A stretch of 64,000 bases of DNA, from positions 1 through 64,000 of the forward strand of contig DF237208.1 in NCBI GenBank assembly GCA_000708835.1, in the 5' to 3' direction. Positions 1-27,025 of the stretch are shown here, piece after piece. The translations under genes were made by a program, and so were the position numbers. The stretch is from Klebsormidium nitens. Lineage: Eukaryota > Plantae > Klebsormidiophyceae. The stretch's first letter is position 1; every line of letters starts with the position of its first letter. The notes below the pieces were generated by a model. That model was not told where the DNA came from. It did no database searches and saw nothing but the letters and a program-made list of their open reading frames with translations.

Positions 1-1190
1 ATCACACCCTCGATGATGCTCCTGATGGTCCGGAGCTATCAATCTGCTGGCCAAACTCTCGCATACCCTTCAGGCAGCGCACAATCTTGTCAACCACCTC
101 AGGTCTGCCCTTGAGAATGCCCCCAGGACTTTCCCTGTTACGCCGCAGTTGAGCTGCCTTGCTCCCTGCAAGCGCTGCCAGCTTCTCTTTCATCGAGTCC
201 TTCAGCTTCCAGTGGCCGTCTGGCCCGCTCCTTTCGTACCACCCTTTCATGGTGTTCACAGTCAGCTTGTCAAAGGGACTGGCAGATCTGCCCGGAGCCG
301 CCTTGATGTGTTGCAGAAAGTTGAGGGCTTCTGAGAGGGATTTGGGGTGCTTGCGGACTGCCTCGGCAATGAGTGGCCAGAGCTTAACAGACCCCCACTT
401 GGTGTAAGGGCCCTTGAGCTTCTTAGGAGCCGGAGGCTGTTGGGGTTGGGGGGTAGGCTCTGCAGCGGGGTTTTCCAGATCAATAAGCACCACTGGAGGG
501 GGTCTTTTCTTCTTTGGCCTACCCACTGGTCTCTTGGCTGCCTCAGCCGCCTGCCGCTTTGCTTCATCCCTCGCCAATTTTTCAGCATCCTTCCTCTTCT
601 GAGCTTCCCAGTGCTCAGCATCAATCTGCTTCTGTCTTTCAAGCTGTTCAGGTGTAGCTTTCTTGAAAAAAGCAGTGATCACAGCGTTGCCAGTGGGCGC
701 CATGACTGGCCCCTGTCTTCTTCCCTGGTAAAATACAAATGCAGGACCTGTCACGGTCAACAGATCATGACGGGTCCATCATCAGAGTTGCGTGGGCGCC
801 AATTGAAACTTTCGCGCCCTAACTGATAGCGAGCCAGCTCCTAGACGTTGATCTACCTACCGAGTCCAGATCGGACGGTTCACTGCAGGGCCAAGCTGGC
901 AGGGCACTCATGCCACAGTGGGCCTCGGACTCACTGTCAGGGCAGTGCCAGCCTGGCCGCGGCGTGGCGCGACGGGCGGCCGCGCCGGCCTTGGCGCGCG
1001 GCGGCGGCGCTTCGCGCCGCAAACCCTAAATCTGCGCGGTCAAGCAGTGCGAAAACCTAAACTCGAATTTCCCGAGTGCGAAATCACAAACTGAAATAAA
1101 TAATTCTTCAAGGCCCGGTGCGAAAACGAAAAATGAACGAAAATAATTCATTTTTTGGGCCCTGTGCGAAATGGGTTGGTCGGTACGGTA
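1..1190 (-). mobile_element. 5' end of a pogo/Tc2-like (IS630-Tc1-mariner superfamily) DNA transposon; continues off the left edge of the window
   Basis: On the minus strand the element would begin TA|CCGTACCGACC (end at 1188, TA at 1189-1190), resembling Tc2/pogo-type CCGTA termini with a TA target. Four subterminal GTGCGAAA motifs lie at 1047, 1076, 1118 and 1164. An intronless basic ORF lies inside. The other end is not visible, so the TIR cannot be confirmed. Confidence 0.5.
2..703 (-). pseudogene. Probable transposase N-terminal region (basic/AT-hook-like RPVGRPKK plus helical DNA-binding region), frameshifted near position 30
   Basis: Part of ORF 2..760, read from the ATG at 703 (MAPTGNAVITAFFKK...). 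After LKGMREFGQQIDSS the frame reaches TGA, while the adjacent frame reads TIRSIIEGV, the expected continuation for this type of helical segment (inference). Confidence 0.45.
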
Positions 1191-18440: not shown

Positions 18441-20058
18441 CTACAGGTACTTCTTTGCCAACATGCGGACGCGGGCGTCGAACTGAGGGGAGGTGATCTT
18501 TGACCCAGGGACGTAGAGGGGGTTCAGTAAGATCTGCATGAGAGGGAGCCAGGACTTAGCAAGCCTGTGCGCTGGGCATGCTGGAGAGCACGTTGCGGCA
18601 GGCAGAAAATGGAATCCACCTTGCGGTGTGCATAACAGATTGTCTTACTTATCCTGGTCTGCAACAAAAACCGTAAGTTAGGAACTTGGCGTTTCGCTAC
18701 TACCGACCCAAACCGGCTCTGGCGATCAGTCCTGCAATCAGAGGGTCATTGTGTGTACTCGTGAGTCTACCGACCCAAACCGGCTCTGGCGATCAGTCCT
18801 GCAATCAGAGGGTCATTGTGTGTACTCGTGAGTCTCAGCCATCAGTCCGGGGAAACGATCGCTGGGGTGAACCCCAGGGGATCCATTGAGAACCCCCGAT
18901 CACCTTTCATTGCTTATGGTGGGTCAACCGGCGCGCTCTTACCTTGATGTACAACTCGTGCACTTCTTGAAAGAAGTTTTTGATCCCGTCCTCGCTCTTG
19001 AGGTCGTGCAGCAGCATCAGCTTTGCCTGCCCCGCCGTGACATAGGTCGACACAAACAGGTCGCCGAACTTGTCCACGACCTTCAGATACCTGTACATGC
19101 GACGTGCTTAGCACTCGGCATGCCCAAGAAGAAGTGGCTTATAGAGCAGGAGTGGTTCTCCTGGCTGAGACCAATGCAAAGCGAAGGGGATAAGGGCCTT
19201 CATTCCACCTTGATGTAGGTCCATACTATTCAATGGCATTCCGTGTCCTATGGTATGACAGGATAAAGCTCCCAATTGGGCCCGTCTTGAAAGAGATTCA
19301 GACGCACCGACTGCCCACTTTGCTACTGTAGCTCTGAGACTGTTTGCGTGCAAGACAAATAGTTCCACCCCCACGCGTAACGCAGATCTTATTTCAGAAC
19401 GTGCACTCCTTCTTTGCCGGTGTCTAAATCTTCTCCGTTCAGCTTAAAGAACACAAGTGATGAAATGCAGGCCTGAATAATCCATAAGCTTCAACCCATC
19501 TTCTCTGCGAACAAATGAGTGATTCTGCTCTTTGATGAATACTGAGCCAGGCATCCCTTACATGTTCTGAGTAGTCCAGACCACATCTTGAACTATGTCC
19601 ATTGATGCGTGAAGCACGAACTGGTGCAAGTGCGCCGCCTCATCTTTCTGCACAAAAAAGGAGCAGTTGTGGCATCATGACTTAAAAAACGCCTTATCTC
19701 TGGGCACCAAGGACCCTGCTGACAATAGAAGACCAAAGTCCCCAAGCAAAAGATCCAGTCTGTAACAAACACCTCCGTAATTGATGTCAACCTGCTTTTA
19801 CAAATCAGGGTGGCTTAACCATCATCTGGAATGTGCCTAGTGAACCCTGAACTTCAGTATGTAGAATTTCCCCAGTATAAATGCAGATCAGGGACTCTGT
19901 CGTCCGGACAAGAATGAAAAGGTCTCTGTACATAGGAACGTGACAACAAATGAAGCTCCACGCCTTTTGAAACTTACCCTGGGCCCACTTCCGACCTCAC
20001 TCTCATAGATAGGGCTGTCGTTCTTCCCAACAATTACAAAGCACGCGGTGGTAGCCAT
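18441..20058 (-). CDS. TRS20: TRAPP complex subunit 2 (Sedlin/Trs20), 135 aa
   Basis: Exons 20058-19978, 19647-19562, 19090-18943, 18533-18441 (408 nt). Translation: [19 protein letters not shown]...[30 protein letters not shown]...[18 protein letters not shown]...[13 protein letters not shown]. Confidence 0.96.
18700..18835. repeat. Perfect 67-bp tandem duplication in TRS20 intron 3
   Basis: CTACCGACCCAAACCGGCTCTGGCGATCAGTCC...GTACTCGTGAGTCT starts at 18700 and again at 18767. Confidence 0.95.
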
Positions 20059-20980
20059 GAATAGCGAAACCACCTCAGTGCCTCATCCCTTACTATCCGT
20101 CTGATGTCAAGCGCGCTCTTGCCCGATATCCTTGCTCAGAGATCTAACCAGTGATGGAATCAAGGGTCACCAGATTTTTGAAGCGAAAGCGCCGCCAACA
20201 GAGCTGAAGCAGCAACATTCAGCTCACGCTTGCTTGACTTGTTCCTCTACTAGACTTTCTGCGGTCGCTATGCAACTTTCTAATCGAATGGAACGCCCGT
20301 CGCCGGCTTTGCAAAGGAAGCGCAAGGAGCCTTGGGCGAGTGTGGATGAGGTGGAGAGGTCTAGGAAGCATACATTGAGACAAGGTGATCCCTTCTTGAA
20401 TGCTTTCTAAGAGTGGGCGCTGCAGACAAGCGCAATTTGTCCAGTCTGCTGGGAAATCTGCTTCCAAGTTCCATTGTCAGGCCGGGCGGGGCCGTAGACG
20501 TTGCCGCTGCTTAGTCGATTGGCCGGAACCCTACTTTGCGTTACGCGCGTTGCCCCAGGAGGTCGAGCTTTGTTTCGAGCTTGCACTAACGCAAGAAGGA
20601 GAGTAACGCCAGCGGTGTAGCATGCTAGCTACAAGGAGCACAGCAAGCATGCCAGGAAAACCCAATGCATTCGTACTAAAGAATGAAAGTGCAATTATCG
20701 AACTGAGGCCAGCTTTATTTCGATTGGCGCTTGCATGTTCTTCTGCCCTGTACCAAGTGCGGAGGAGTTTCTTCTCAGGTTTCCGTTGTCTTCAATGGTG
20801 ACCAAAGCCTTTCTACAGTGTACGTGAAAGCATTGCTGTTTTCCTAACCCGGTCCCTTGAAGAAGCTGGTCTGCTCGCTTGTCCCTAGAATGAGCTTGTC
20901 AATTGGAGAGACTATGCGACTTCTTGCCTTTCTGTCACCAATAGTTGTAGTCTGACCAGGGGTTGCGGGGTTGAGCAACG

Positions 20981-21115
20981 GAGAAACAGAACAAGACTCA
21001 GCAAATTGGGGCAGAAACGAAACGGAGTCTCAAAGTGCCTCTCAACTGAGAAACAGAACAAGACTCAGCAAATTGGGGCAGAAACAAAACGGAGTACTCA
21101 AAGTGCCTCTCAACT
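20981..21115. repeat. Near-perfect 67-bp tandem duplication just upstream of the 21131 acceptor
   Basis: GAGAAACAGAACAAGACTCAGCAAATTGGGGCAGAAAC.AAACGGAGT..CAAAGTGCCTCTCAACT starts at 20981 and 21048. Confidence 0.95.
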
Positions 21116-21135
21116 GACAATCCTTGTCAGCAACC

Positions 21136-23949
21136 ATGTACGTCCGTGACATCATGTGCACAGCGTACTGCGCCTGCGGCCACTGTTGCAACTGGGAGCA
21201 CGGTCTAAAGCTCTTCGGCGGCAACTATCTAGCTCTCCACATGTCCCTGATCAAAGTCGGTGTCAGGAAGCGGAGGAAGGGCGTCAGAGAGCCTGCAATC
21301 ATCGCACGCTACTGGACGAAGAAGGCGCCTGCGAGCCTAGTGGGGAAGGAGTACCTGGGAACGACGTCAATTGGGACATATCCACACGCGGTGAGCGGCG
21401 GGCTGGCTAGCTAGCTGGCTTGGTTGGCAGCTGAGAAGGGGGTGCACTCACACTCCCTCTAGGCGGAGAGGAGTCTTACACTTTGGTTTTTGGAGCTTAA
21501 TCCTGTGCCGTTGATGCAGGATTGCCTACTGCCACTTTTATGGGTTTTGTCTCCGCTTTGTCGCCTTGTTCTGATCCTCTTCAGGGGTAAACTTTCCATG
21601 AATGTGTTGAGAAGGGGCGCTCAAATCCAAATCAGATTGCTCTTGCTGAATTGCTCGAGCAGAACGTGCCTATCCGGGATCGGTTACTGAGGTCTTTCAC
21701 CAGCTCAATTTCTAGGTTGTGCTGACATAGTAGCGAGCTTGCATTTTTCTCCATGTTTCTGTTTGTGTGTAAAAACTTTCGTCAGGCGGACTGGAGTTCA
21801 GCATCAATCTGTCAGAGCTGAGTTGGGAGGGCCTTTTGCCAAAATCTTTCTCACATCCGGACCAATTGTCTGACACCCTTATGACGAAATCCTTGGTGAG
21901 CTCAATGCTGAAACGGTTTGATCAAAGATACCGCCCAAGGTTTGAGTGATCACTTTGCCTTTCTCACTGAGCGCGCTTGGGGATGAACAATTGAAAAGGC
22001 CTGCAATTGCAGGCCTCATACATTTCAGGAGATTCTTCATTGGAACTGGGCTGGAATGCAGATAATTTTGTCCAAGAAGGAATCCCAGTATCAATCTATG
22101 CAGCCCATGCTCTAAGGCACACTGTATTCTTCTCTTGCCCCAAAGGGCACAGAGACCGACCTTACTTGAGTTGCTCTTATTACAGCGCCCGTCTCTTCTT
22201 CTCTTCGTGATTTCCAGCGCACGGCGCCGTCTCTCAGACCCAGCCGATTCTCTGAGCTGAGCCTTCTTTGATCCATTGTAAGGCTCATCGCGATATTCAT
22301 GCACCACAACGCACTCCTCCTTCTTGCAGCCACGACCGCCCTTGTTCTCTCGGGAGAGCATCAAGCGGTGGGAGCGAATACCTTTCCGAATAATCTTCCC
22401 CTGGAGGCTACCACCAAGGTACGGCACACTGGCGGTCGATAAGCGGCACTACCCAATAGGCACCATGATGTATATACCAGGACACGGCTGGGGAAAGGTG
22501 AGCACTGATATTTGTGGATCGTTGTTGAGCGAGTGCTCTTTGCTTCACCAGTTTTCTCCTCCCTTCTATTGATCATGTTGTTGGGGTTTGTCCCTGTTGG
22601 TTTTTAAAGTCTCTCTAGTTTCATGTTCGCGTTGCTAGCCTTCCCTTTTGAGAGACTTCTTCTTTCCTAATCGCCTTTCCTTTATGATAGCCGCCCTTTC
22701 ACTTGTTGTTACCCTCCGCCTGTTGTACTTGCCGTTTGTCGTCCACAGATTCTTTGCCTTGCCTTATCTTACCATTGTAAGCTTCAGTCTCTGGTTCCCA
22801 AGCTGGTTCACAGACTCATTTCTGAGACGCTTCCAGAGGGATTACTTGTAACTTCTTTGTGACGTGCGAATCAGTCCTCCAATGATGCGCGGCAGCTCAC
22901 TTCTGAAGGAAAGTAAGGCGCGCTTGCCCATCGCCCTTTCTGTTTTGGACATTAATGTCTGTCTACCTTTTACGTACGGAGGTAAAGTAAGTTGCTGTCT
23001 ACCTTACGGGGGGACTGCAAGTTGTCTGTTGTAATCAGCGGTGCGGTCTATGGACCAAGGTGCTGCCACGTGGCACGTCGTGGTCGAACCATGCCGCAGA
23101 AACGAAGATGCTCTTAGGCTCTCAGCTCTCGCCCAAGTCGCTGTGGCTAACAGCTGAAATTGTGCCCATTAGCGGCATCTTTCGAACGGACTCTGTCGTT
23201 TCAGTCATGAAGGACCGAAGCAAAGAATGCATCAGAAAACCTCTTGCTACTTGCGGGTGCAAGTGGAAGCGGCACGAGAATGAGATTTCTACAGAACAAA
23301 GGTTCGAGCGAACCACGGAAACCGTTAAGACCCACTCTACTTTCTCTCGGCCCCTTCTCAGGCGGAGGACGCAGGGCAGGCCATCCAAGGCGCCCATCAC
23401 ATCGACTTGTACAAGCCCCCGCACAGCGGGGCGTGGCGGTGGGGGCGACCAATCAAGCGGGTAAGAAGACCGGTTCTTTTCTCTTTTTTCTTCGCTTTGA
23501 AAGGGTCGCTTGGCAGGAGAAGCGGTTGAGAGCTTCTTCCTGTTTCCCCTGTCCGACGGCGTGGTTCTGGTGGCACGAATGCCGGGGCGTTGATACTTTC
23601 TCCAGAAAGGCTGAGCGCGTTTGTGGGCCCTCGAGGCCTCTTGAGCGTAACGATCTTGTTCTAAACTAATCTGGCCTTTGTTTCCGTGTTGGCTGGCATC
23701 AAAGTGCATCGAAGAGGAAACCATCGTGCAGCGCAGAGATGCTGTGCCATGCAGTGGATATTGTCTGCTGGTCACTATTGTCGCAAGCTCATTTGACGCT
23801 ATGCTTGGTTCTCCTTGTCCGGACAGGTGGAGGTTTACCCGCCAGCGGAATGGTCGTGGAGGGAACGGTCCATTGATCGGTGGCGCTTGCCGGGTCCGAT
23901 AAAGAAGATTTGTAAAGGAGTCAACAAGGTTCGAAAATTCCTTTTCTGA
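21136..23949 (+). CDS. 3D (Asp-Asp-Asp, MltA-like double-psi beta-barrel) domain protein with N-terminal Cys cluster, about 214 aa; a possible extra upstream exon at 20270-20384
   Basis: Exons 21136-21390, 22330-22497, 23362-23460, 23827-23949 (all phase 0, GT-AG, 645 nt). Motifs: CTAYCACGHCCNW, GTLAVDKRHYPIGTMMYIPGHGWGKAEDAGQAIQGAHHIDLY and AWRWGR, matching the 3D signature TAY...A.D...P.GT..YIPG.G...A.D.G.AI.G..ID.Y. Confidence 0.85.
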
Positions 23950-25272
23950 GACACGCCGTCCGTGTTTCCAATCCACTCCGTCAATTAAGGCTAGCATGGC
24001 CGAAGGCATGGAGAGTTCTGTACGTCAGGTCGATACTTGACAAAAGACAACCTGGACGCCGAACAAATCAAACAGTTATTGGAAGGGAAAGATGTATTTG
24101 AGCTATATTGAAGTACGTTAGGTTCCAGTGAGGTTGAGCTAAGTGAGCCGCTGATGCGCTTTTTCCGAACCCAAAGCGGCGAGTCGAGACCGTCGCAACC
24201 GGCTAACATGCCAATCCGCAGCTTATTCTTGATACGACCGTCTACCATCTATGACCGCACGGATGCAACTGCTTGCTTCCTTGACCCGTGTACACTAGAA
24301 TCAAGTATACAACGCTGCGGTAAGAATCACCCGGGGACACGTATGCATGGTAATCTGTATAATGGATCTGCATTGAAGAATTTGGTTTGTCATAGCCTTG
24401 CATACACTGACGGTGAGAGAGATCTATGCATGCTCAAATCAAACTTTTGAGTCAAGGGCTTTTCGCATGGTCAAGGATGTCGAAACGTCACCAATACTTG
24501 TCTTGTGGACCCACACTCGTTTCTTGGAACAGATTTCACTTCGTTCGAGACGCGCGCCGGCCGCGTCGAAGCAGATTCTAGCGTTGCACCGTTCACGTAC
24601 GCGGCGCTTTGACGCGTGCATGGCCAACCTGACACCAGCTGTGGGCGGAGTGTTTCCCTGCACACAGAGATTCTGCTTCCTCAACCAGCTTGAGTTTCGG
24701 CGACTCATCTTTGGTTGTCATGGAGCACTGTGCTTCGATCGAGTCGGACACGAACGCGGTCAGGGATCACAGAGCGGTTTTGCTCCCGGACATTGATGCG
24801 TTTTGAAAGACGAGAAACTCCTGTCGTTTGTAGGTCGTGCATGGCCCCCGAGACTTTGCTCGCCCGCTTAACACCGTGACGAAGTCTGCATCGCGGCTTC
24901 CCGTCAAGTCAGCAAGTTGGATTGTCGAGCTTTGAAGCCGAGATTCTTACCTCCAGTAGCCCAACCTCGGTCAATCTTGATTCAACTATTCAACTATCGT
25001 CTAGGCTTGGTACCTTGACCTCGATAATAGAGTTGCAAAAGTCCGTCTTGCTTCAACTATCGAGACTGCACAAGTTGCACCCCGCATTACTAAGTTCAGT
25101 GCTTGGAAACTGCCCACAACTTCCCGCACTTGCAAAAAGCGCCCATCACCAAGAATTGACAGCGAAAGCGCCCACAGAAAGCTCCACCAAACAGAGGACC
25201 AGCAAAGCGCCCACGAAATCTTTCCAGCGCAAACCCCCCCCCCTCCGACAGCTGTCCCTTCACCCCCCCACA

Positions 25273-27025
25273 ATGTGCATCTACGGCACGATCCCCGACC
25301 CCGTGGCGGTCGGCGTGTGGTTCCGGGACGACTACGAGTGGCGCCTCTATGACGTCACCTCCGCGCAGCTGATCAAGACCGCTTACGTGGACGCGGAGAA
25401 GAAGCTGGACCTGACGATCAAGTCGGCGGTCCATACCGGGGGCGCCCGGTACACGGTGGACCTGCGCACCATGCGCCAGACCAACTGCGCGAGTGGGATG
25501 CAGCGCCCGGTGAAGATCAACATGCCGGAGGCGGCCGCGGTGGTGCACGCGAGCAAGGGGGTGCCCATGACGAATGGGGTCCAGGTAAGGGCAGGGGGGA
25601 GAGTTGGTCTTTTGTGTGTTCATTTTTGGGCTGAGGGATGCGGGGGGTGGGACTGCATATATTCTTCATTTCTTGGATGGATTGAGAGGATTCATCTCTG
25701 AATTTTGGTGGGGGGTTTGATTTGGAGCAGTTTTCATGTCTGAAGATGAATGTAAAGGTTTCGTCTTCGCTTGGGAGGCAGAGCTCGAAGTCCCGAAGGA
25801 TGCAATGCGGGGCGAGAGGAGGAGAAAGAAGAGAGTGTGGAACAGCCACGCCATCCCCAGGAAGCTCAAAACCTTTCTCAATCTCAACAGGCCATCCACG
25901 TCTCAAAAAGGAACCGAGAAGCATAGAAGGTGCGCACTAGTCCCAAAAGCAGAAACATAAACGTTCGCCAATCAAAATTGGGGGCTTCAAACAATTGCTT
26001 ATCTGGATACTGGTTGCGTTTCTGATCGCAATTGGTCTGGTTGGCGCAGCCCCAGCGAATGCAGCCCACATCGCTTTAGGATCTTCAATCTCCTGGTGTC
26101 TACGAACCCAGATCCTATGTTTCGTGTTTTTGCCAATGGCGCAAAACGGCGAGCTTGCAGTGTTTCACGGCAGTATTTGAGCACGAAGTACTGGTTCCTG
26201 GTTCGAACAACACACCTTCGGCTGCAACGCTTCTCTACAATCCTTCCGCCCTTCTCTGAAACTATCACAGGGTGCAGCCTACCCATGACACGCAATCAAG
26301 TCAGATACCTTGTCTCGAAGCCGAACGATGCGTTCTCCACGGTTTCGAGTTGAAGCTTACGAAAGTTGTACGACATGTTCGCAAATGCTCACAGAAGCCT
26401 GTACGGGCTGCTTGCAGAGCGCGGACGAGACCAGCGAGCCGGAGAGCGTCATCTCCTCGGAGCTGCCAACCGCCAACGGATATGTCACGGTGAGCATTGC
26501 GTTCTGATCGTATTTTGTCCTGGTTGCCAGCGTTTGCAAAGGGTGAGCAACTTCGCGGGTTCACAAAGACGAGGATGGATTGCTTTGTCCACGAGAACAG
26601 ACAAGAAAGCTGTTTTGTCGTCCGATCTTGGCGCTGCGCTGTAAGTCCTTTTGCACACTCACATTCTGCAATAGACGCAGCTGCTCTCTACGCGGGTCGC
26701 TTTGACACACAGCGTTAATACTCAAGACAGAAATCACGAGGGTCAACTGGATAGCCCTCGAAAAGGGAAACGAGTCTGTGGGTTGAGGTCCTTCAATGTG
26801 TGTCAAAAGTGTCTCGTGGGCGTCCCGTCTTGCAGAAAGGAGTCACGTCTAAGAGCTTGTCATTTGACACGTGGCATGTTTTCATGTGGGCTGTTCGCGG
26901 ATGGAGGGGTTGTCAAGCGCCCTTGTGGGCAATCACTTTCTGAGCCGTTGGAGGGAGCCAACGGCAAACAATTTGGTACACAGGATCTGAGTTCGACTAG
27001 TTCGTCTCAAGTCTCGACCGTATAA
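25273..27025 (+). CDS. Small WWE-domain protein (3' exon structure uncertain)
   Basis: Exon 25273-25584 is strongly GC3-biased and encodes WFRDDYEWRLYD...IKTAY...RYTVDLRTMRQTNCASGMQRPV, the WWE pattern W..Y...I..AY...Y.VDL..M.QTN..SG..R.V. Exon 26418-26489 has AG/GT boundaries. The last exon 26983-27025 is tentative. Confidence 0.7.

What the first reader, a model, noticed from the sequence alone, without database searches (positions are those of the whole stretch)
21136..23949. Spliced eukaryotic gene for a bacterial-type 3D/MltA-like lytic-transglycosylase domain
Seen: a four-exon gene whose product keeps all three aspartates of the 3D signature (TLAVD, KAED, HIDLY). DAGQAIQGAHHIDLY parallels the MltA catalytic segment (DVGGAIKG.HFDIY as recalled). 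It also has a CxCxxCC cluster after the TAY motif. Established: 3D domains are peptidoglycan-acting bacterial domains, and charophytes and mosses retain plastid peptidoglycan enzymes. Inference: a domesticated horizontal acquisition (its introns argue against contamination) acting in plastid peptidoglycan remodelling or antibacterial defence. No clear transit peptide is seen from ATG 21136; a phase-compatible upstream exon at 20270-20384 is basic (RKRK) rather than transit-like.
Basis: partly seen in the sequence, partly recalled or inferred. Interest (0 to 1): 0.7.

Follow-up and report, generated by a model that had tools for sequence, protein, structure and literature searches.

The report
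Green-lineage gene for bacterial wall-cutting enzyme
This is a real, spliced and expressed nuclear gene of the alga Klebsormidium nitens for a bacterial-type (YuiC/MltA-like) peptidoglycan-cutting enzyme. It belongs to an old, unstudied gene family shared by green algae and early land plants that still keep a bacterial wall around their chloroplasts, so it is a candidate trimmer of that wall.

Summary
Four GT..AG, phase-0 exons (21136-21390, 22330-22497, 23362-23460, 23827-23949, + strand) encode 214 aa. All three introns are removed exactly as modelled in RNA contigs of four runs from four studies.

- **Domain:** The product scores 42 bits on Pfam 3D (cut-off 23.8). It keeps the three Asp and the Thr/Tyr of TAY. 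A full-length orthologue folds (pLDDT 93) into the YuiC/MltA fold (Z 11.1 and 10.9).
- **Organism and annotation:** The window is Klebsormidium nitens. The gene is already filed as "3D domain-containing protein" (GAQ85878.1), but that model lacks the first 35 residues, which carry TAY and the Cys cluster.
- **Age:** It is not a lineage-specific acquisition. The family spans streptophyte algae, bryophytes, lycophytes, ferns, a conifer, two angiosperms and some chlorophytes. Intron positions are shared with Marchantia and Chara.
- **Bacterial kin:** The nearest relatives are Desulfobacterota lipoproteins. The eukaryotic form lost the lipoprotein signal and gained a basic insert and a cationic C-terminal helix.
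- **Start codon:** ATG 21136 is the true start. The proposed upstream exon lies on the divergent sedlin gene's side of the intergenic gap.
- **Function:** A role in cutting plastid peptidoglycan is inferred from family distribution only. There is no import signal, and localisation and activity are untested.

Another report of this scan describes a similar case, a GHL10 hydrolase, elsewhere in this genome.

The parts
20692..21135 (+). 5' UTR (approximate 5' end). Contains four upstream ATGs with short ORFs and a 67-bp tandem repeat.
   Evidence: RNA contigs run contiguously over 20692/20703-21010 and 21056-21389, and the repeat breaks assembly between them. uATGs lie at 20735, 20795, 20890 and 20914, and an in-frame TGA lies at 21115.
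21136..21390 (+). Exon 1 coding part, residues 1-85. Carries the start Met, the TAY motif (T9, Y11), the Cys cluster C12/C14/C17/C18 with W20-E21, and the eukaryote-specific basic insert.
   Evidence: Codons 1-35 show 14 synonymous and 0 non-synonymous codon differences against L001. The N-terminus aligns with all family members.
21157..21204 (+). Residues C8-G23, the CTAYCxCGxCCxWExG motif. It contains the active-site Thr/Tyr and four conserved Cys.
   Evidence: These residues are nearly invariant in 97 family members, bacterial ones included. YuiC T91 orients the catalytic Asp and Y93 is proposed to take part in catalysis (PMC4499186).
21265..21279 (+). Basic cluster R44-K48 (RKRRK), inside the ~37-residue insert found only in eukaryotic members.
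   Evidence: The insert is 35-45 residues in most eukaryote-type rows (a few outliers run shorter or longer), against a 12-residue linker in bacterial rows.
21391..22329 (+). Intron 1 (939 nt, GT..AG, phase 0).
   Evidence: The joint is seen in 4 of 4 runs. It sits at the same column and phase as introns in Marchantia and Chara.
22330..22497 (+). Exon 2, residues 86-141. Covers the second insert and the first half of the 3D domain, including D122 (22438-22440).
   Evidence: It aligns to YuiC residues around D129.
22498..23361 (+). Intron 2 (864 nt, GT..AG, phase 0). Some low-depth contigs retain it.
   Evidence: The joint is seen in 4 of 4 runs. Unspliced contigs cover 22469-23389 at lower depth. 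The position is shared with Marchantia and Chara.
23362..23460 (+). Exon 3, residues 142-174. Contains D144 (23368-23370) and the catalytic-equivalent D156 (23404-23406).
   Evidence: Pfam 3D profile 33-60. The spacing D122/D144/D156 matches YuiC D129/D151/D162, with one extra residue as in the whole family. The exon is 100% identical at protein level in L001.
23461..23826 (+). Intron 3 (366 nt, GT..AG, phase 0).
   Evidence: The joint is seen in 3 of 4 runs. The position is shared with Marchantia, Chara and the chlorophyte Myrmecia.
23827..23949 (+). Exon 4 coding part, residues 175-214 plus the stop codon. This is the eukaryote-specific C-terminal extension. Residues 197-214 (23893-23946) form a cationic amphipathic helix.
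   Evidence: Bacterial kin end 9-12 residues after WGR, whereas eukaryotic ones continue for about 39. The helix is predicted with pLDDT above 90. Net charge is +6 and the hydrophobic moment is 0.55.
23950..24226 (+). 3' UTR (approximate end).
   Evidence: Spliced contigs end at 24179-24226.

Best explanation
The locus is a nuclear, three-intron, expressed gene of Klebsormidium nitens. It encodes a 214-aa single-domain protein of the YuiC/MltA ('3D', double-psi beta-barrel) lytic-transglycosylase type.

It belongs to a green-lineage-wide orthologous family that descends from a bacterial lipoprotein, whose nearest sampled kin are in Desulfobacterota. The gene was acquired before the streptophytes diversified and probably in the ancestor of Viridiplantae. 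On becoming eukaryotic, the protein lost the lipoprotein signal peptide. It gained a basic ~37-residue beta insert and a ~39-residue tail ending in a cationic helix.

The catalytic-site residues are kept: T9 and Y11 of TAY, plus D122, D144 and D156. The most likely activity is therefore non-hydrolytic cleavage of GlcNAc-MurNAc glycan strands, giving 1,6-anhydro ends.

The most likely substrate is the thin peptidoglycan layer between the plastid envelope membranes, which K. nitens and the other family-bearing lineages still make. The enzyme would serve turnover or splitting of that layer during plastid growth and division.

Shown here: gene structure, splicing, purifying selection, domain, fold, family range, intron sharing, and the differences from bacterial kin. 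Inferred: enzymatic activity, substrate, and location. Reaching the intermembrane space would need a non-canonical route, because the fold starts at about residue 3 and leaves no room for a cleavable presequence.

The confidence of 0.5 applies to the whole statement including the plastid-wall function. For the identity part alone (real expressed gene, 3D/YuiC-MltA fold, ancient green-lineage family of bacterial origin) I put confidence at about 0.9.
For: **Gene and expression.** The exon/intron model comes from reading the sequence. Spliced contigs occur in 4 runs from 4 studies. pN/pS is 0.027 against a sister-species locus with the same structure and the same neighbours, V-ATPase H and sedlin.

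**Domain and fold.**
- Pfam 3D scores 42.1 bits, E 1e-10.
- The family profile hits YuiC at E 1.8e-19.
- The AF2 model of the Mesotaenium orthologue has pLDDT 93.1 and pTM 0.85.
- The AF2 model of P0003 has pLDDT 86.3.
- VIA-align gives YuiC Z 11.1 (rmsd 2.6, 96 aa, 32% id), N. gonorrhoeae MltA Z 10.9 and E. coli MltA Z 10.0, against about 8 for expansins. Foldseek gives probability 1.00 for YuiC and MltA.

**Catalytic residues.** Three Asp are invariant across 97 sequences. They map to YuiC D129/D151/D162, which equal MltA D261/D297/D308. TAY corresponds to YuiC T91/Y93 (PMC4499186).

**Origin.** Bacterial rows (65) and eukaryote-type rows (32) are split by one branch with SH-aLRT 99. The bacterial rows are lipoproteins, with a lipobox in at least 47 of 65. 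Sixty of the best 80 genome loci are Thermodesulfobacteriota.

**Age.** The three introns sit at the same columns and phase as in Marchantia and Chara.

**Distribution.** The family is found in K. nitens, Mesostigma, Chara, Closterium, Spirogloea, Mesotaenium, mosses, liverworts, Selaginella, Diphasiastrum, Adiantum, Cryptomeria, Chloropicon, Pyramimonas and Pedinophyceae. Among angiosperms only Tasmannia and Colocasia appear. This resembles the published range of the plastid peptidoglycan toolkit: K. nitens, Marchantia, Selaginella, P. patens, Cupressaceae, Chloropicon and prasinophytes, with loss in most chlorophytes and many streptophytes (PMC12681378; PMC10784329).

**Precedent.** Moss DipM1 sits at the chloroplast surface although no transit peptide is predicted (PMC4015805).
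Against: - There is no signal or transit peptide in any family member. About 10 residues precede TAY, the in-frame stop lies 21 nt upstream of the ATG, and the first beta strand of the fold begins at about residue 4. The default prediction is therefore cytosolic.
- The basic RKRRK cluster could equally be a nuclear-localisation or nucleic-acid/lipid-binding element.
- The K. nitens protein is the most divergent member, with a terminal branch of 2.28. It differs at 11 of 49 columns that are at least 90% conserved. These include residues next to the catalytic Asps that even YuiC keeps: AIKG is AIQG, and R before the catalytic Asp is H. Others are conserved within the 97-member family: EDRG is EDAG, and AADT is AVDK.
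- Co-distribution is imperfect and was not formally tested. Citrus and Asparagus are reported to have the full toolkit, yet no 3D hit was seen. The toolkit status of Colocasia and Tasmannia is unknown.
- No glaucophyte homologue was seen, although glaucophytes have the thickest plastid wall.
- No activity or localisation data exist.
Confidence: 0.5

Rival explanations
1. The protein has been neofunctionalised and works in the cytosol or nucleus. On this view the barrel was co-opted for a substrate or partner unrelated to plastid peptidoglycan, such as another GlcNAc-containing glycan or a binding-only role. The basic insert and cationic tail would be the new functional elements.
For: No targeting peptide is seen in any of the roughly 50 eukaryotic members. 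The eukaryote-specific basic insert and tail are conserved. The RKRRK cluster resembles a monopartite NLS, although this is my own reading and was not tested. K. nitens has diverged at second-shell active-site positions. YuiC also cleaves chito-oligosaccharide (PMC4499186).
Against: All five catalytic-site residues and the Cys cluster are kept under strong purifying selection across more than 700 My of green-lineage evolution. The gene is missing from most angiosperms and most chlorophytes, which fits loss together with the plastid wall better than a general cytosolic role. No known cytosolic substrate exists for this enzyme class.
Confidence: 0.25
2. The protein is an antibacterial defence enzyme that lyses invading or surface bacteria, in the way a lysozyme does.
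For: The fold and residues are those of a peptidoglycan glycan-strand cleaver.
Against: There is no secretion signal. The gene is single-copy and slowly evolving in most lineages rather than expanded or fast-evolving as immune genes often are. It was lost in most seed plants, which still face bacteria.
Confidence: 0.08
3. The gene is a recent, Klebsormidium-specific horizontal acquisition, a bacterial contaminant, or a decaying pseudogene.
For: The domain family is overwhelmingly bacterial and phage-borne.
Against: The gene has three spliceosomal introns that are removed in RNA. It is flanked by eukaryotic genes and is syntenic in a second Klebsormidium. Its intron positions are shared with Marchantia, Chara and Myrmecia. 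pN/pS is 0.027. Eukaryotic members form one side of a branch supported at 99.
Confidence: 0.01

Closest known systems
Bacillus subtilis YuiC (SpsC group stationary-phase survival protein; PDB 4wjt, 4wli, 4wlk)
   Same: Both are minimal single-domain MltA-type barrels. They share the three Asp and the Thr/Tyr of TAY, and the GT(I/L)xxIPGYG and D.G.AI.G..(I/L)DLY segments. This is the best sequence match (profile E 1.8e-19) and the best structural match (Z 11.1). YuiC produces a 1,6-anhydro product (PMC4499186).
   Different: YuiC is secreted through a signal peptide and forms a domain-swapped dimer. It lacks the CxCGxCC cluster, both inserts and the C-terminal helix. The NCBIfam SpsC model is matched only locally, at 23.9 bits against a cut-off of 280.
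E. coli and Neisseria MltA (GH102 membrane-bound lytic murein transglycosylase A)
   Same: Same barrel and same catalytic Asp (D308 equivalent), with Z 10-10.9 at rmsd 1.6-1.9. MltA is an outer-membrane lipoprotein, as the nearest bacterial kin of this family appear to be.
   Different: MltA is about 340 aa and has a large inserted domain B and the Pfam MltA domain. Here only the 3D domain is matched, and the inserts are short beta elements.
Desulfobacterota '3D domain-containing' lipoproteins (e.g. Desulforhopalus vacuolatus P0085, Desulfosalsimonas propionicica P0146)
   Same: These are the nearest relatives, at 43-50% identity over about 85% of the length. They share the TAYCxCGxCCxWE cluster, the FS.DS...PW...R...FPW insert and the 3D core.
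   Different: They have an N-terminal lipoprotein signal, a 12-residue linker in place of the ~37-residue basic insert, and no C-terminal extension. They are uncharacterised and have no conserved gene neighbourhood in the two loci checked.
Known plastid peptidoglycan hydrolases of moss and glaucophytes: DipM (LytM) and MltB/VanY
   Same: Both are nuclear genes of bacterial type whose loss blocks chloroplast division in Physcomitrium. DipM1 reaches the chloroplast surface without a predicted transit peptide (PMC4015805). MltB and VanY were reported by Utsunomiya et al. 2021, which I could cite only at second hand.
   Different: They belong to different enzyme families, and DipM is of cyanobacterial descent. 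No paper in the searchable library mentions a plant 3D/MltA-type protein.
Aphid RlpA, AmiD and LdcA genes acquired from bacteria
   Same: These are eukaryotic nuclear genes of bacterial origin. They include a double-psi beta-barrel (RlpA) and are thought to act on the peptidoglycan of a resident endosymbiont (PMC9116674, PMC8689515).
   Different: They occur in animals, were acquired much more recently and act on a different symbiont. RlpA is a different barrel family.

Membership tests
Pfam 3D domain (PF06725), the MltA/YuiC-type lytic transglycosylase core | Profile match above the curated gathering score | tested here: met
   P0003 (residues 36-214 of the product) scores 42.1 bits, E 1e-10, against a cut-off of 23.8, covering profile positions 2-69 of 72. 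Exons 2 and 3 hit consecutive profile parts.
Pfam 3D domain (PF06725), the MltA/YuiC-type lytic transglycosylase core | Three conserved aspartates (YuiC D129/D151/D162, equal to MltA D261/D297/D308) | tested here: met
   D122, D144 and D156 are invariant in the 97-sequence alignment and align to the YuiC aspartates (residue roles from PMC4499186).
Pfam 3D domain (PF06725), the MltA/YuiC-type lytic transglycosylase core | Thr and Tyr of the N-terminal strand (YuiC T91/Y93) that position and assist the catalytic Asp | tested here: met
   T9-A10-Y11 are present in exon 1 and nearly invariant in the family. Equivalence to YuiC T91/Y93 rests on the structural alignment range, model 1..176 to chain 81..176, not on a residue-level printout.
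Pfam 3D domain (PF06725), the MltA/YuiC-type lytic transglycosylase core | Double-psi beta-barrel fold superposable on YuiC/MltA | tested here: met
   Z is 11.1 for YuiC and 10.9 and 10.0 for MltA, using the pLDDT-93 model of the Mesotaenium orthologue. The same top hits were obtained with the K. nitens P0003 model.
Pfam 3D domain (PF06725), the MltA/YuiC-type lytic transglycosylase core | Extracytoplasmic location (signal peptide or lipoprotein anchor), where peptidoglycan is found | tested here: not met
   There is no N-terminal extension. TAY starts at residue 9, a TGA lies 21 nt upstream of the ATG, and the same holds across eukaryotic members.
Pfam 3D domain (PF06725), the MltA/YuiC-type lytic transglycosylase core | Cleavage of the MurNAc-GlcNAc bond with formation of 1,6-anhydroMurNAc | not testable with these tools
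   This needs an enzyme assay.
MltA proper (GH102, with domain B) | Pfam MltA domain or inserted domain B | tested here: not met
   Only the 3D domain is reported by Pfam for P0003 and for the bacterial kin. Protein length is 214 aa against about 340.
Firmicute Sps proteins (NCBIfam SpsC) | Full-length equivalog match | tested here: not met
   Exon 2 gives only a local match of 23.9 bits, against a cut-off of 280.
Plastid peptidoglycan machinery of Viridiplantae | Phyletic co-occurrence with the Mur/PBP toolkit | tested here: inconclusive
   The family's range overlaps the published toolkit range. No formal profile test was run, and there are apparent exceptions (Citrus, Asparagus, glaucophytes).
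Plastid peptidoglycan machinery of Viridiplantae | Plastid or envelope targeting | tested here: not met
   No presequence is possible at the N-terminus. A non-canonical route is not excluded (DipM1 precedent).
Plastid peptidoglycan machinery of Viridiplantae | Chloroplast-division phenotype on loss | not testable with these tools
   This needs knock-outs in Physcomitrium or Marchantia.

The most novel reading that the evidence does not exclude
This family is a so-far overlooked glycan-strand-cleaving enzyme of the green-lineage plastid wall. It was taken from a Desulfobacterota-like bacterium rather than from the cyanobacterial ancestor of plastids. In the eukaryote its lost lipid anchor was replaced by a cationic C-terminal helix and a basic insert. 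These new elements would carry it, without any cleavable transit peptide, to the outer envelope or intermembrane space, where it trims peptidoglycan during plastid division.
Probability: 0.35. Interest if true: 0.7.

Novelty: new variant of a known kind. Interest (0 to 1): 0.55.

Why it matters
Plastid peptidoglycan in green algae, bryophytes, ferns and conifers is now accepted, but its turnover enzymes are barely known. Only DipM and MltB/VanY have been studied, and only in moss.

A single-copy, strongly conserved MltA/YuiC-type gene that appears to track the plastid wall across the green lineage is a direct, testable candidate for cutting the glycan strands. Knock-outs are feasible in Physcomitrium and Marchantia.

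Three further points follow:
- It adds a non-cyanobacterial, Desulfobacterota-like contributor to the mosaic origin of the plastid wall machinery.
- It poses a targeting puzzle: a periplasm-type enzyme with no presequence, paralleling moss DipM1 and the GHL10 hydrolase noted elsewhere in this genome.
- It corrects the public gene model, which omits the 35 residues carrying two active-site residues and the Cys cluster.

Tried and rejected
- **Exon 1 searches.** Exon 1 alone found nothing in Pfam or PDB. In the word search it found only one exon-sized ORF from a sister species, because the length window excludes full-length kin. The all-against-all search with exon 1 then recovered the family.
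- **Protein atlas.** With exon 1 it gave only weak leads (0.86-0.87) to small phage 3D proteins. I treated these as a hint that the TAYC/Cys motif is widespread, not as evidence.
- **Bacterial gene neighbourhoods.** Two loci gave unrelated neighbours: MutL, GlgC and PfkB in one, and a metallophosphatase, AMMECR1 and a thioesterase in the other. No operon clue emerged.
- **Upstream exon 20270-20384.** Rejected, as explained under the observation check.
- **Long antisense ORFs.** ORFs at 23122-24009 and 21879-22427 on the minus strand have no Pfam match and overlap confirmed introns and exons, so they were judged chance ORFs.
- **Literature.** Searches for a plant 3D/MltA protein found nothing. 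Utsunomiya et al. 2021 is not held.
- **Tree rooting.** The tree is unrooted and has no distant 3D outgroup. It shows the eukaryote/bacteria split but not the donor.
- **Model coordinates.** The tools do not return them, so the geometry of the Cys cluster (zinc site or disulfides) and the packing of the C-terminal helix could not be checked.
Full report
**1. Observation**

The sequence between 21136 and 23949 contains four + strand exons: 21136-21390, 22330-22497, 23362-23460 and 23827-23949. Each has GT..AG borders and all junctions fall between codons. They encode 85+56+33+40 = 214 residues.
- CTAYCACGHCC at residues 8-18
- LAVD (D122)
- AED (D144)
- HIDLY (D156)

Laying contigs of four public runs from four studies on 20000-24600 showed the first two introns removed in every run. 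The third was removed in three of the four. One 1002-nt contig runs 21056-21389 | 22329-22495 | 23360-23459 | 23826-24226. These runs are therefore RNA, and the mRNA is spliced exactly as modelled. Low-depth contigs also retain intron 2.

**2. Start of the protein and the proposed upstream exon**

Transcript contigs are contiguous over 20692-21010 and again over 21056-21389. A 67-bp tandem repeat (20976-21117, 2.1 copies) breaks the assemblies between them. A 97-nt contig (20981-21077) lies across the 21010/21056 break. No joint enters this stretch.

The frame of ATG 21136 is closed by TGA at 21115. The ATG and its context are conserved in a sister species. Codons 1-35 differ from that species at 14 codons, all synonymous. 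Every family member starts about 10 residues before TAY.

The start is therefore ATG 21136. The public model (GAQ85878.1, which is P0003, 179 aa) begins at Met36. It omits TAY and the Cys cluster. From Met36 onward it is identical to the exon translations.

The suggested upstream exon (20270-20384) lies in the region 20000-20460. That region forms separate contigs. They adjoin exon-like blocks that are conserved in L001. One of them (window 19001-19110) overlaps an L001 gene called on the minus strand with a Sedlin_N hit. A Pfam scan of window 19891-20058 (minus strand) found nothing. Depth drops to zero between 20462 and 20615 in three runs. I read this as a head-to-head gene pair with a short shared promoter region.

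**3. Identity**

- Exon by exon, Pfam 3D matches exon 2 (profile 2-20) and exon 3 (profile 33-60).
- P0003 scores 42.1 bits, E 1e-10.
- The exhaustive search with exon 1 and cluster look-ups identify the window as Klebsormidium nitens.
- A 97-sequence family profile hits B. subtilis YuiC at E 1.8e-19.
- AlphaFold models are confident: P0003 has pLDDT 86.3, and the full-length Mesotaenium orthologue has pLDDT 93.1 and pTM 0.85.
- The models match YuiC (Z 11.1, rmsd 2.6 over 96 residues, 32% id) and MltA of Neisseria (Z 10.9) and E. coli (Z 10.0). Generic double-psi barrels such as expansins score about 8 or less.

According to the YuiC structure paper (PMC4499186):
- D162 (MltA D308) is the catalytic carboxylate.
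- T91 orients D162.
- Y93 and D151 are proposed to help abstract the O6 proton.
- D129 is the third conserved Asp.

In this protein these residues are D156, T9, Y11, D144 and D122, and all are present.

**4. Selection and a sister locus**

A Logan contig from a related Klebsormidium (L001) carries the same gene next to V-ATPase H and sedlin. Its exons are 95-100% identical in protein, with 67 synonymous and 6 non-synonymous differences (pS 0.45, pN 0.012, ratio 0.027). Its introns are about 68% identical and their splice sites are conserved.

**5. The family and its origin**

Profile word searches return about 50 eukaryote-type clusters.
- Streptophyte algae: Klebsormidium, Mesostigma, Chara, Closterium, Spirogloea, Mesotaenium.
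- Mosses: Sphagnum, Physcomitrium, Ceratodon.
- Liverworts: Marchantia, Calypogeia, Riccia.
- Lycophytes and ferns: Selaginella, Diphasiastrum, Adiantum.
- Seed plants: Cryptomeria, and only two angiosperms, Tasmannia and Colocasia.
- Chlorophytes: Chloropicon, Pyramimonas, a pedinophyte, Myrmecia.
- Unnamed marine and environmental sequences with the same architecture.

Below these come thousands of bacterial proteins at 43-50% identity. Every named one is from Desulfobacterota. Sixty of the 80 best genome loci are labelled Thermodesulfobacteriota, and most of the rest are generic 'delta proteobacterium' MAGs.

The bacterial proteins are lipoproteins. At least 47 of 65 have a lipobox, mostly followed by Ala. 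They share the TAYCxCGxCCxWE cluster and the second insert.

The eukaryotic proteins differ in three consistent ways:
- They have no signal peptide.
- They carry a ~37-residue basic insert after WE.G, which the model predicts as beta strands.
- They carry a ~39-residue C-terminal extension ending in a cationic helix.

A maximum-likelihood tree separates 65 bacterial from 32 eukaryote-type rows on one branch (SH-aLRT 99, length 1.21). Within the latter, streptophytes group roughly by taxonomy. The tree is unrooted, so the donor is not proven. No cyanobacterial sequence appears among the best hits of either search.

**6. Age of the gene in eukaryotes**

I mapped exon borders of the annotated Marchantia, Chara and Myrmecia genes on their genomic loci.
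- The three K. nitens introns fall at the same alignment columns (92, 149, 182) and the same phase 0 as in Marchantia and Chara.
- Column 182 is also shared with the chlorophyte Myrmecia.
- Two further phase-2 introns are shared by Marchantia and Chara (one of them also by Myrmecia) and are absent in K. nitens.

The gene with its introns therefore predates the streptophyte radiation and probably the green-lineage split. This is not a recent or lineage-specific transfer.

**7. Peculiarity of the Klebsormidium protein**

It has the longest terminal branch in the tree (2.28). It departs from the family at 11 of 49 columns that are at least 90% conserved, more than any other member. Four of these lie beside the catalytic aspartates:
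- AADT is AVDK.
- EDRG is EDAG.
- AIKG is AIQG.
- The Arg before the catalytic Asp is His.

The sister species has the same residues, under strong constraint. Activity or specificity may therefore be altered in this genus.

**8. Function**

Shown here: this is a conserved, expressed protein with an intact MltA/YuiC-type active site.

Inferred: it cleaves peptidoglycan glycan strands, and its substrate is the plastid wall.

The argument for the plastid wall runs as follows:
- K. nitens encodes the ten Mur genes, and its plastid peptidoglycan has been visualised (PMC12681378; Takano et al. 2018, seen only in the reference list shown).
- The toolkit is reported for prasinophytes, Chloropicon, Marchantia, Selaginella, Physcomitrium, Sphagnum and Cupressaceae, with loss in most chlorophytes and many seed plants. 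This resembles the range of this family.

The argument against is the absence of any presequence. The first strand of the fold begins at about residue 4, so nothing could be cleaved off. Moss DipM1 is a precedent for chloroplast-surface localisation without a predicted transit peptide (PMC4015805).

The cationic C-terminal helix (net charge +3 to +6 in most members, moderate hydrophobic moment) could replace the lost lipid anchor. That idea is speculation.

Alternatives are a new cytosolic or nuclear role or, with little support, antibacterial defence.

**9. What is known**

The domain call is already in public databases by automatic annotation. I found no paper on a plant 3D/MltA-type protein. 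The moss hydrolases studied so far are DipM and, as cited at second hand, MltB and VanY.

It has the same pattern: bacterial type, intron-bearing, found in wall-keeping lineages, and lacking an import signal. I did not test that note.

**10. Limits**

- Full-length conclusions rest on P0003 (residues 36-214), on exon 1 by reference, and on the Mesotaenium orthologue.
- Absence of the family from particular taxa rests on capped, length-filtered searches.

Noticed in passing
window 21136-21240 (codons 1-35): The public gene model (GAQ85878.1 / A0A1Y1ICS3, 179 aa) starts at Met36. It omits the TAY active-site residues and the four-Cys cluster. RNA contigs, an upstream in-frame stop, family alignment and 14 synonymous versus 0 non-synonymous codon differences all support ATG 21136.
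   Followed up: yes
window 20976-21117: There is a 67-bp tandem repeat (2.1 copies, 96% identical) in the 5' UTR, ending 18 nt before the start codon. It breaks all short-read RNA assemblies at 21010/21056. The sister locus L001 aligns only from 21072 onward, so it may hold a single copy.
   Followed up: partly
window 20692-21135: The roughly 440-nt 5' UTR holds four upstream ATGs (20735, 20795, 20890, 20914) that open short ORFs of 10-30 codons. These may provide translational control.
   Followed up: no
window 19001-20460, minus strand: A divergently transcribed sedlin (TRAPPC2-like) gene appears to lie here. Exon-like conserved blocks sit at 19001-19110, 19534-19673 and 19967-20090, and there is an ATG near 20058. 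The sedlin call rests on the Sedlin_N hit in the L001 gene list; a Pfam scan of window 19891-20058 (minus strand) found nothing. RNA contigs reach about 20460, leaving a gap of about 230 bp (20462-20692) to the 3D gene's transcript, which suggests a likely bidirectional promoter.
   Followed up: partly
window 22469-23389: Low-depth RNA contigs retain intron 2. The retained depth is 27 against about 78 for the spliced form in X1, and 6-8 against 58 in X9. This may be pre-mRNA or a minor retained-intron isoform.
   Followed up: no
window 24922-25698, + strand: The downstream ORF of 259 aa carries a WWE domain (Pfam PF02825, 43 bits). It is probably an exon of the next gene.
   Followed up: no
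window 23122-24009 and 21879-22427, minus strand: Long antisense ORFs of 295 and 182 aa overlap the confirmed exons and introns. Neither has a Pfam match, so they were judged chance ORFs.
   Followed up: partly
residues 119-166 of the product (exons 2-3): The K. nitens protein departs from the family at 11 of 49 highly conserved positions, and four of these lie next to the catalytic aspartates. It also has the longest branch in the tree, yet it is under strong purifying selection within the genus.
   Followed up: partly
L074 (QBUR01000174.1, 'Candidatus Methanocomedens' MAG): A Desulfobacterota-type 3D lipoprotein gene, 68% identical to the Desulforhopalus one, sits on a contig binned to an ANME archaeon. 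The contig probably belongs to its sulfate-reducing partner.
   Followed up: no
P0008 (Colocasia) and P0069: These two monocot-type models carry 60-70 extra N-terminal residues. Both have an internal Met about 19 residues before TAY, so the extension may be a mis-called 5' UTR rather than a targeting peptide.
   Followed up: no
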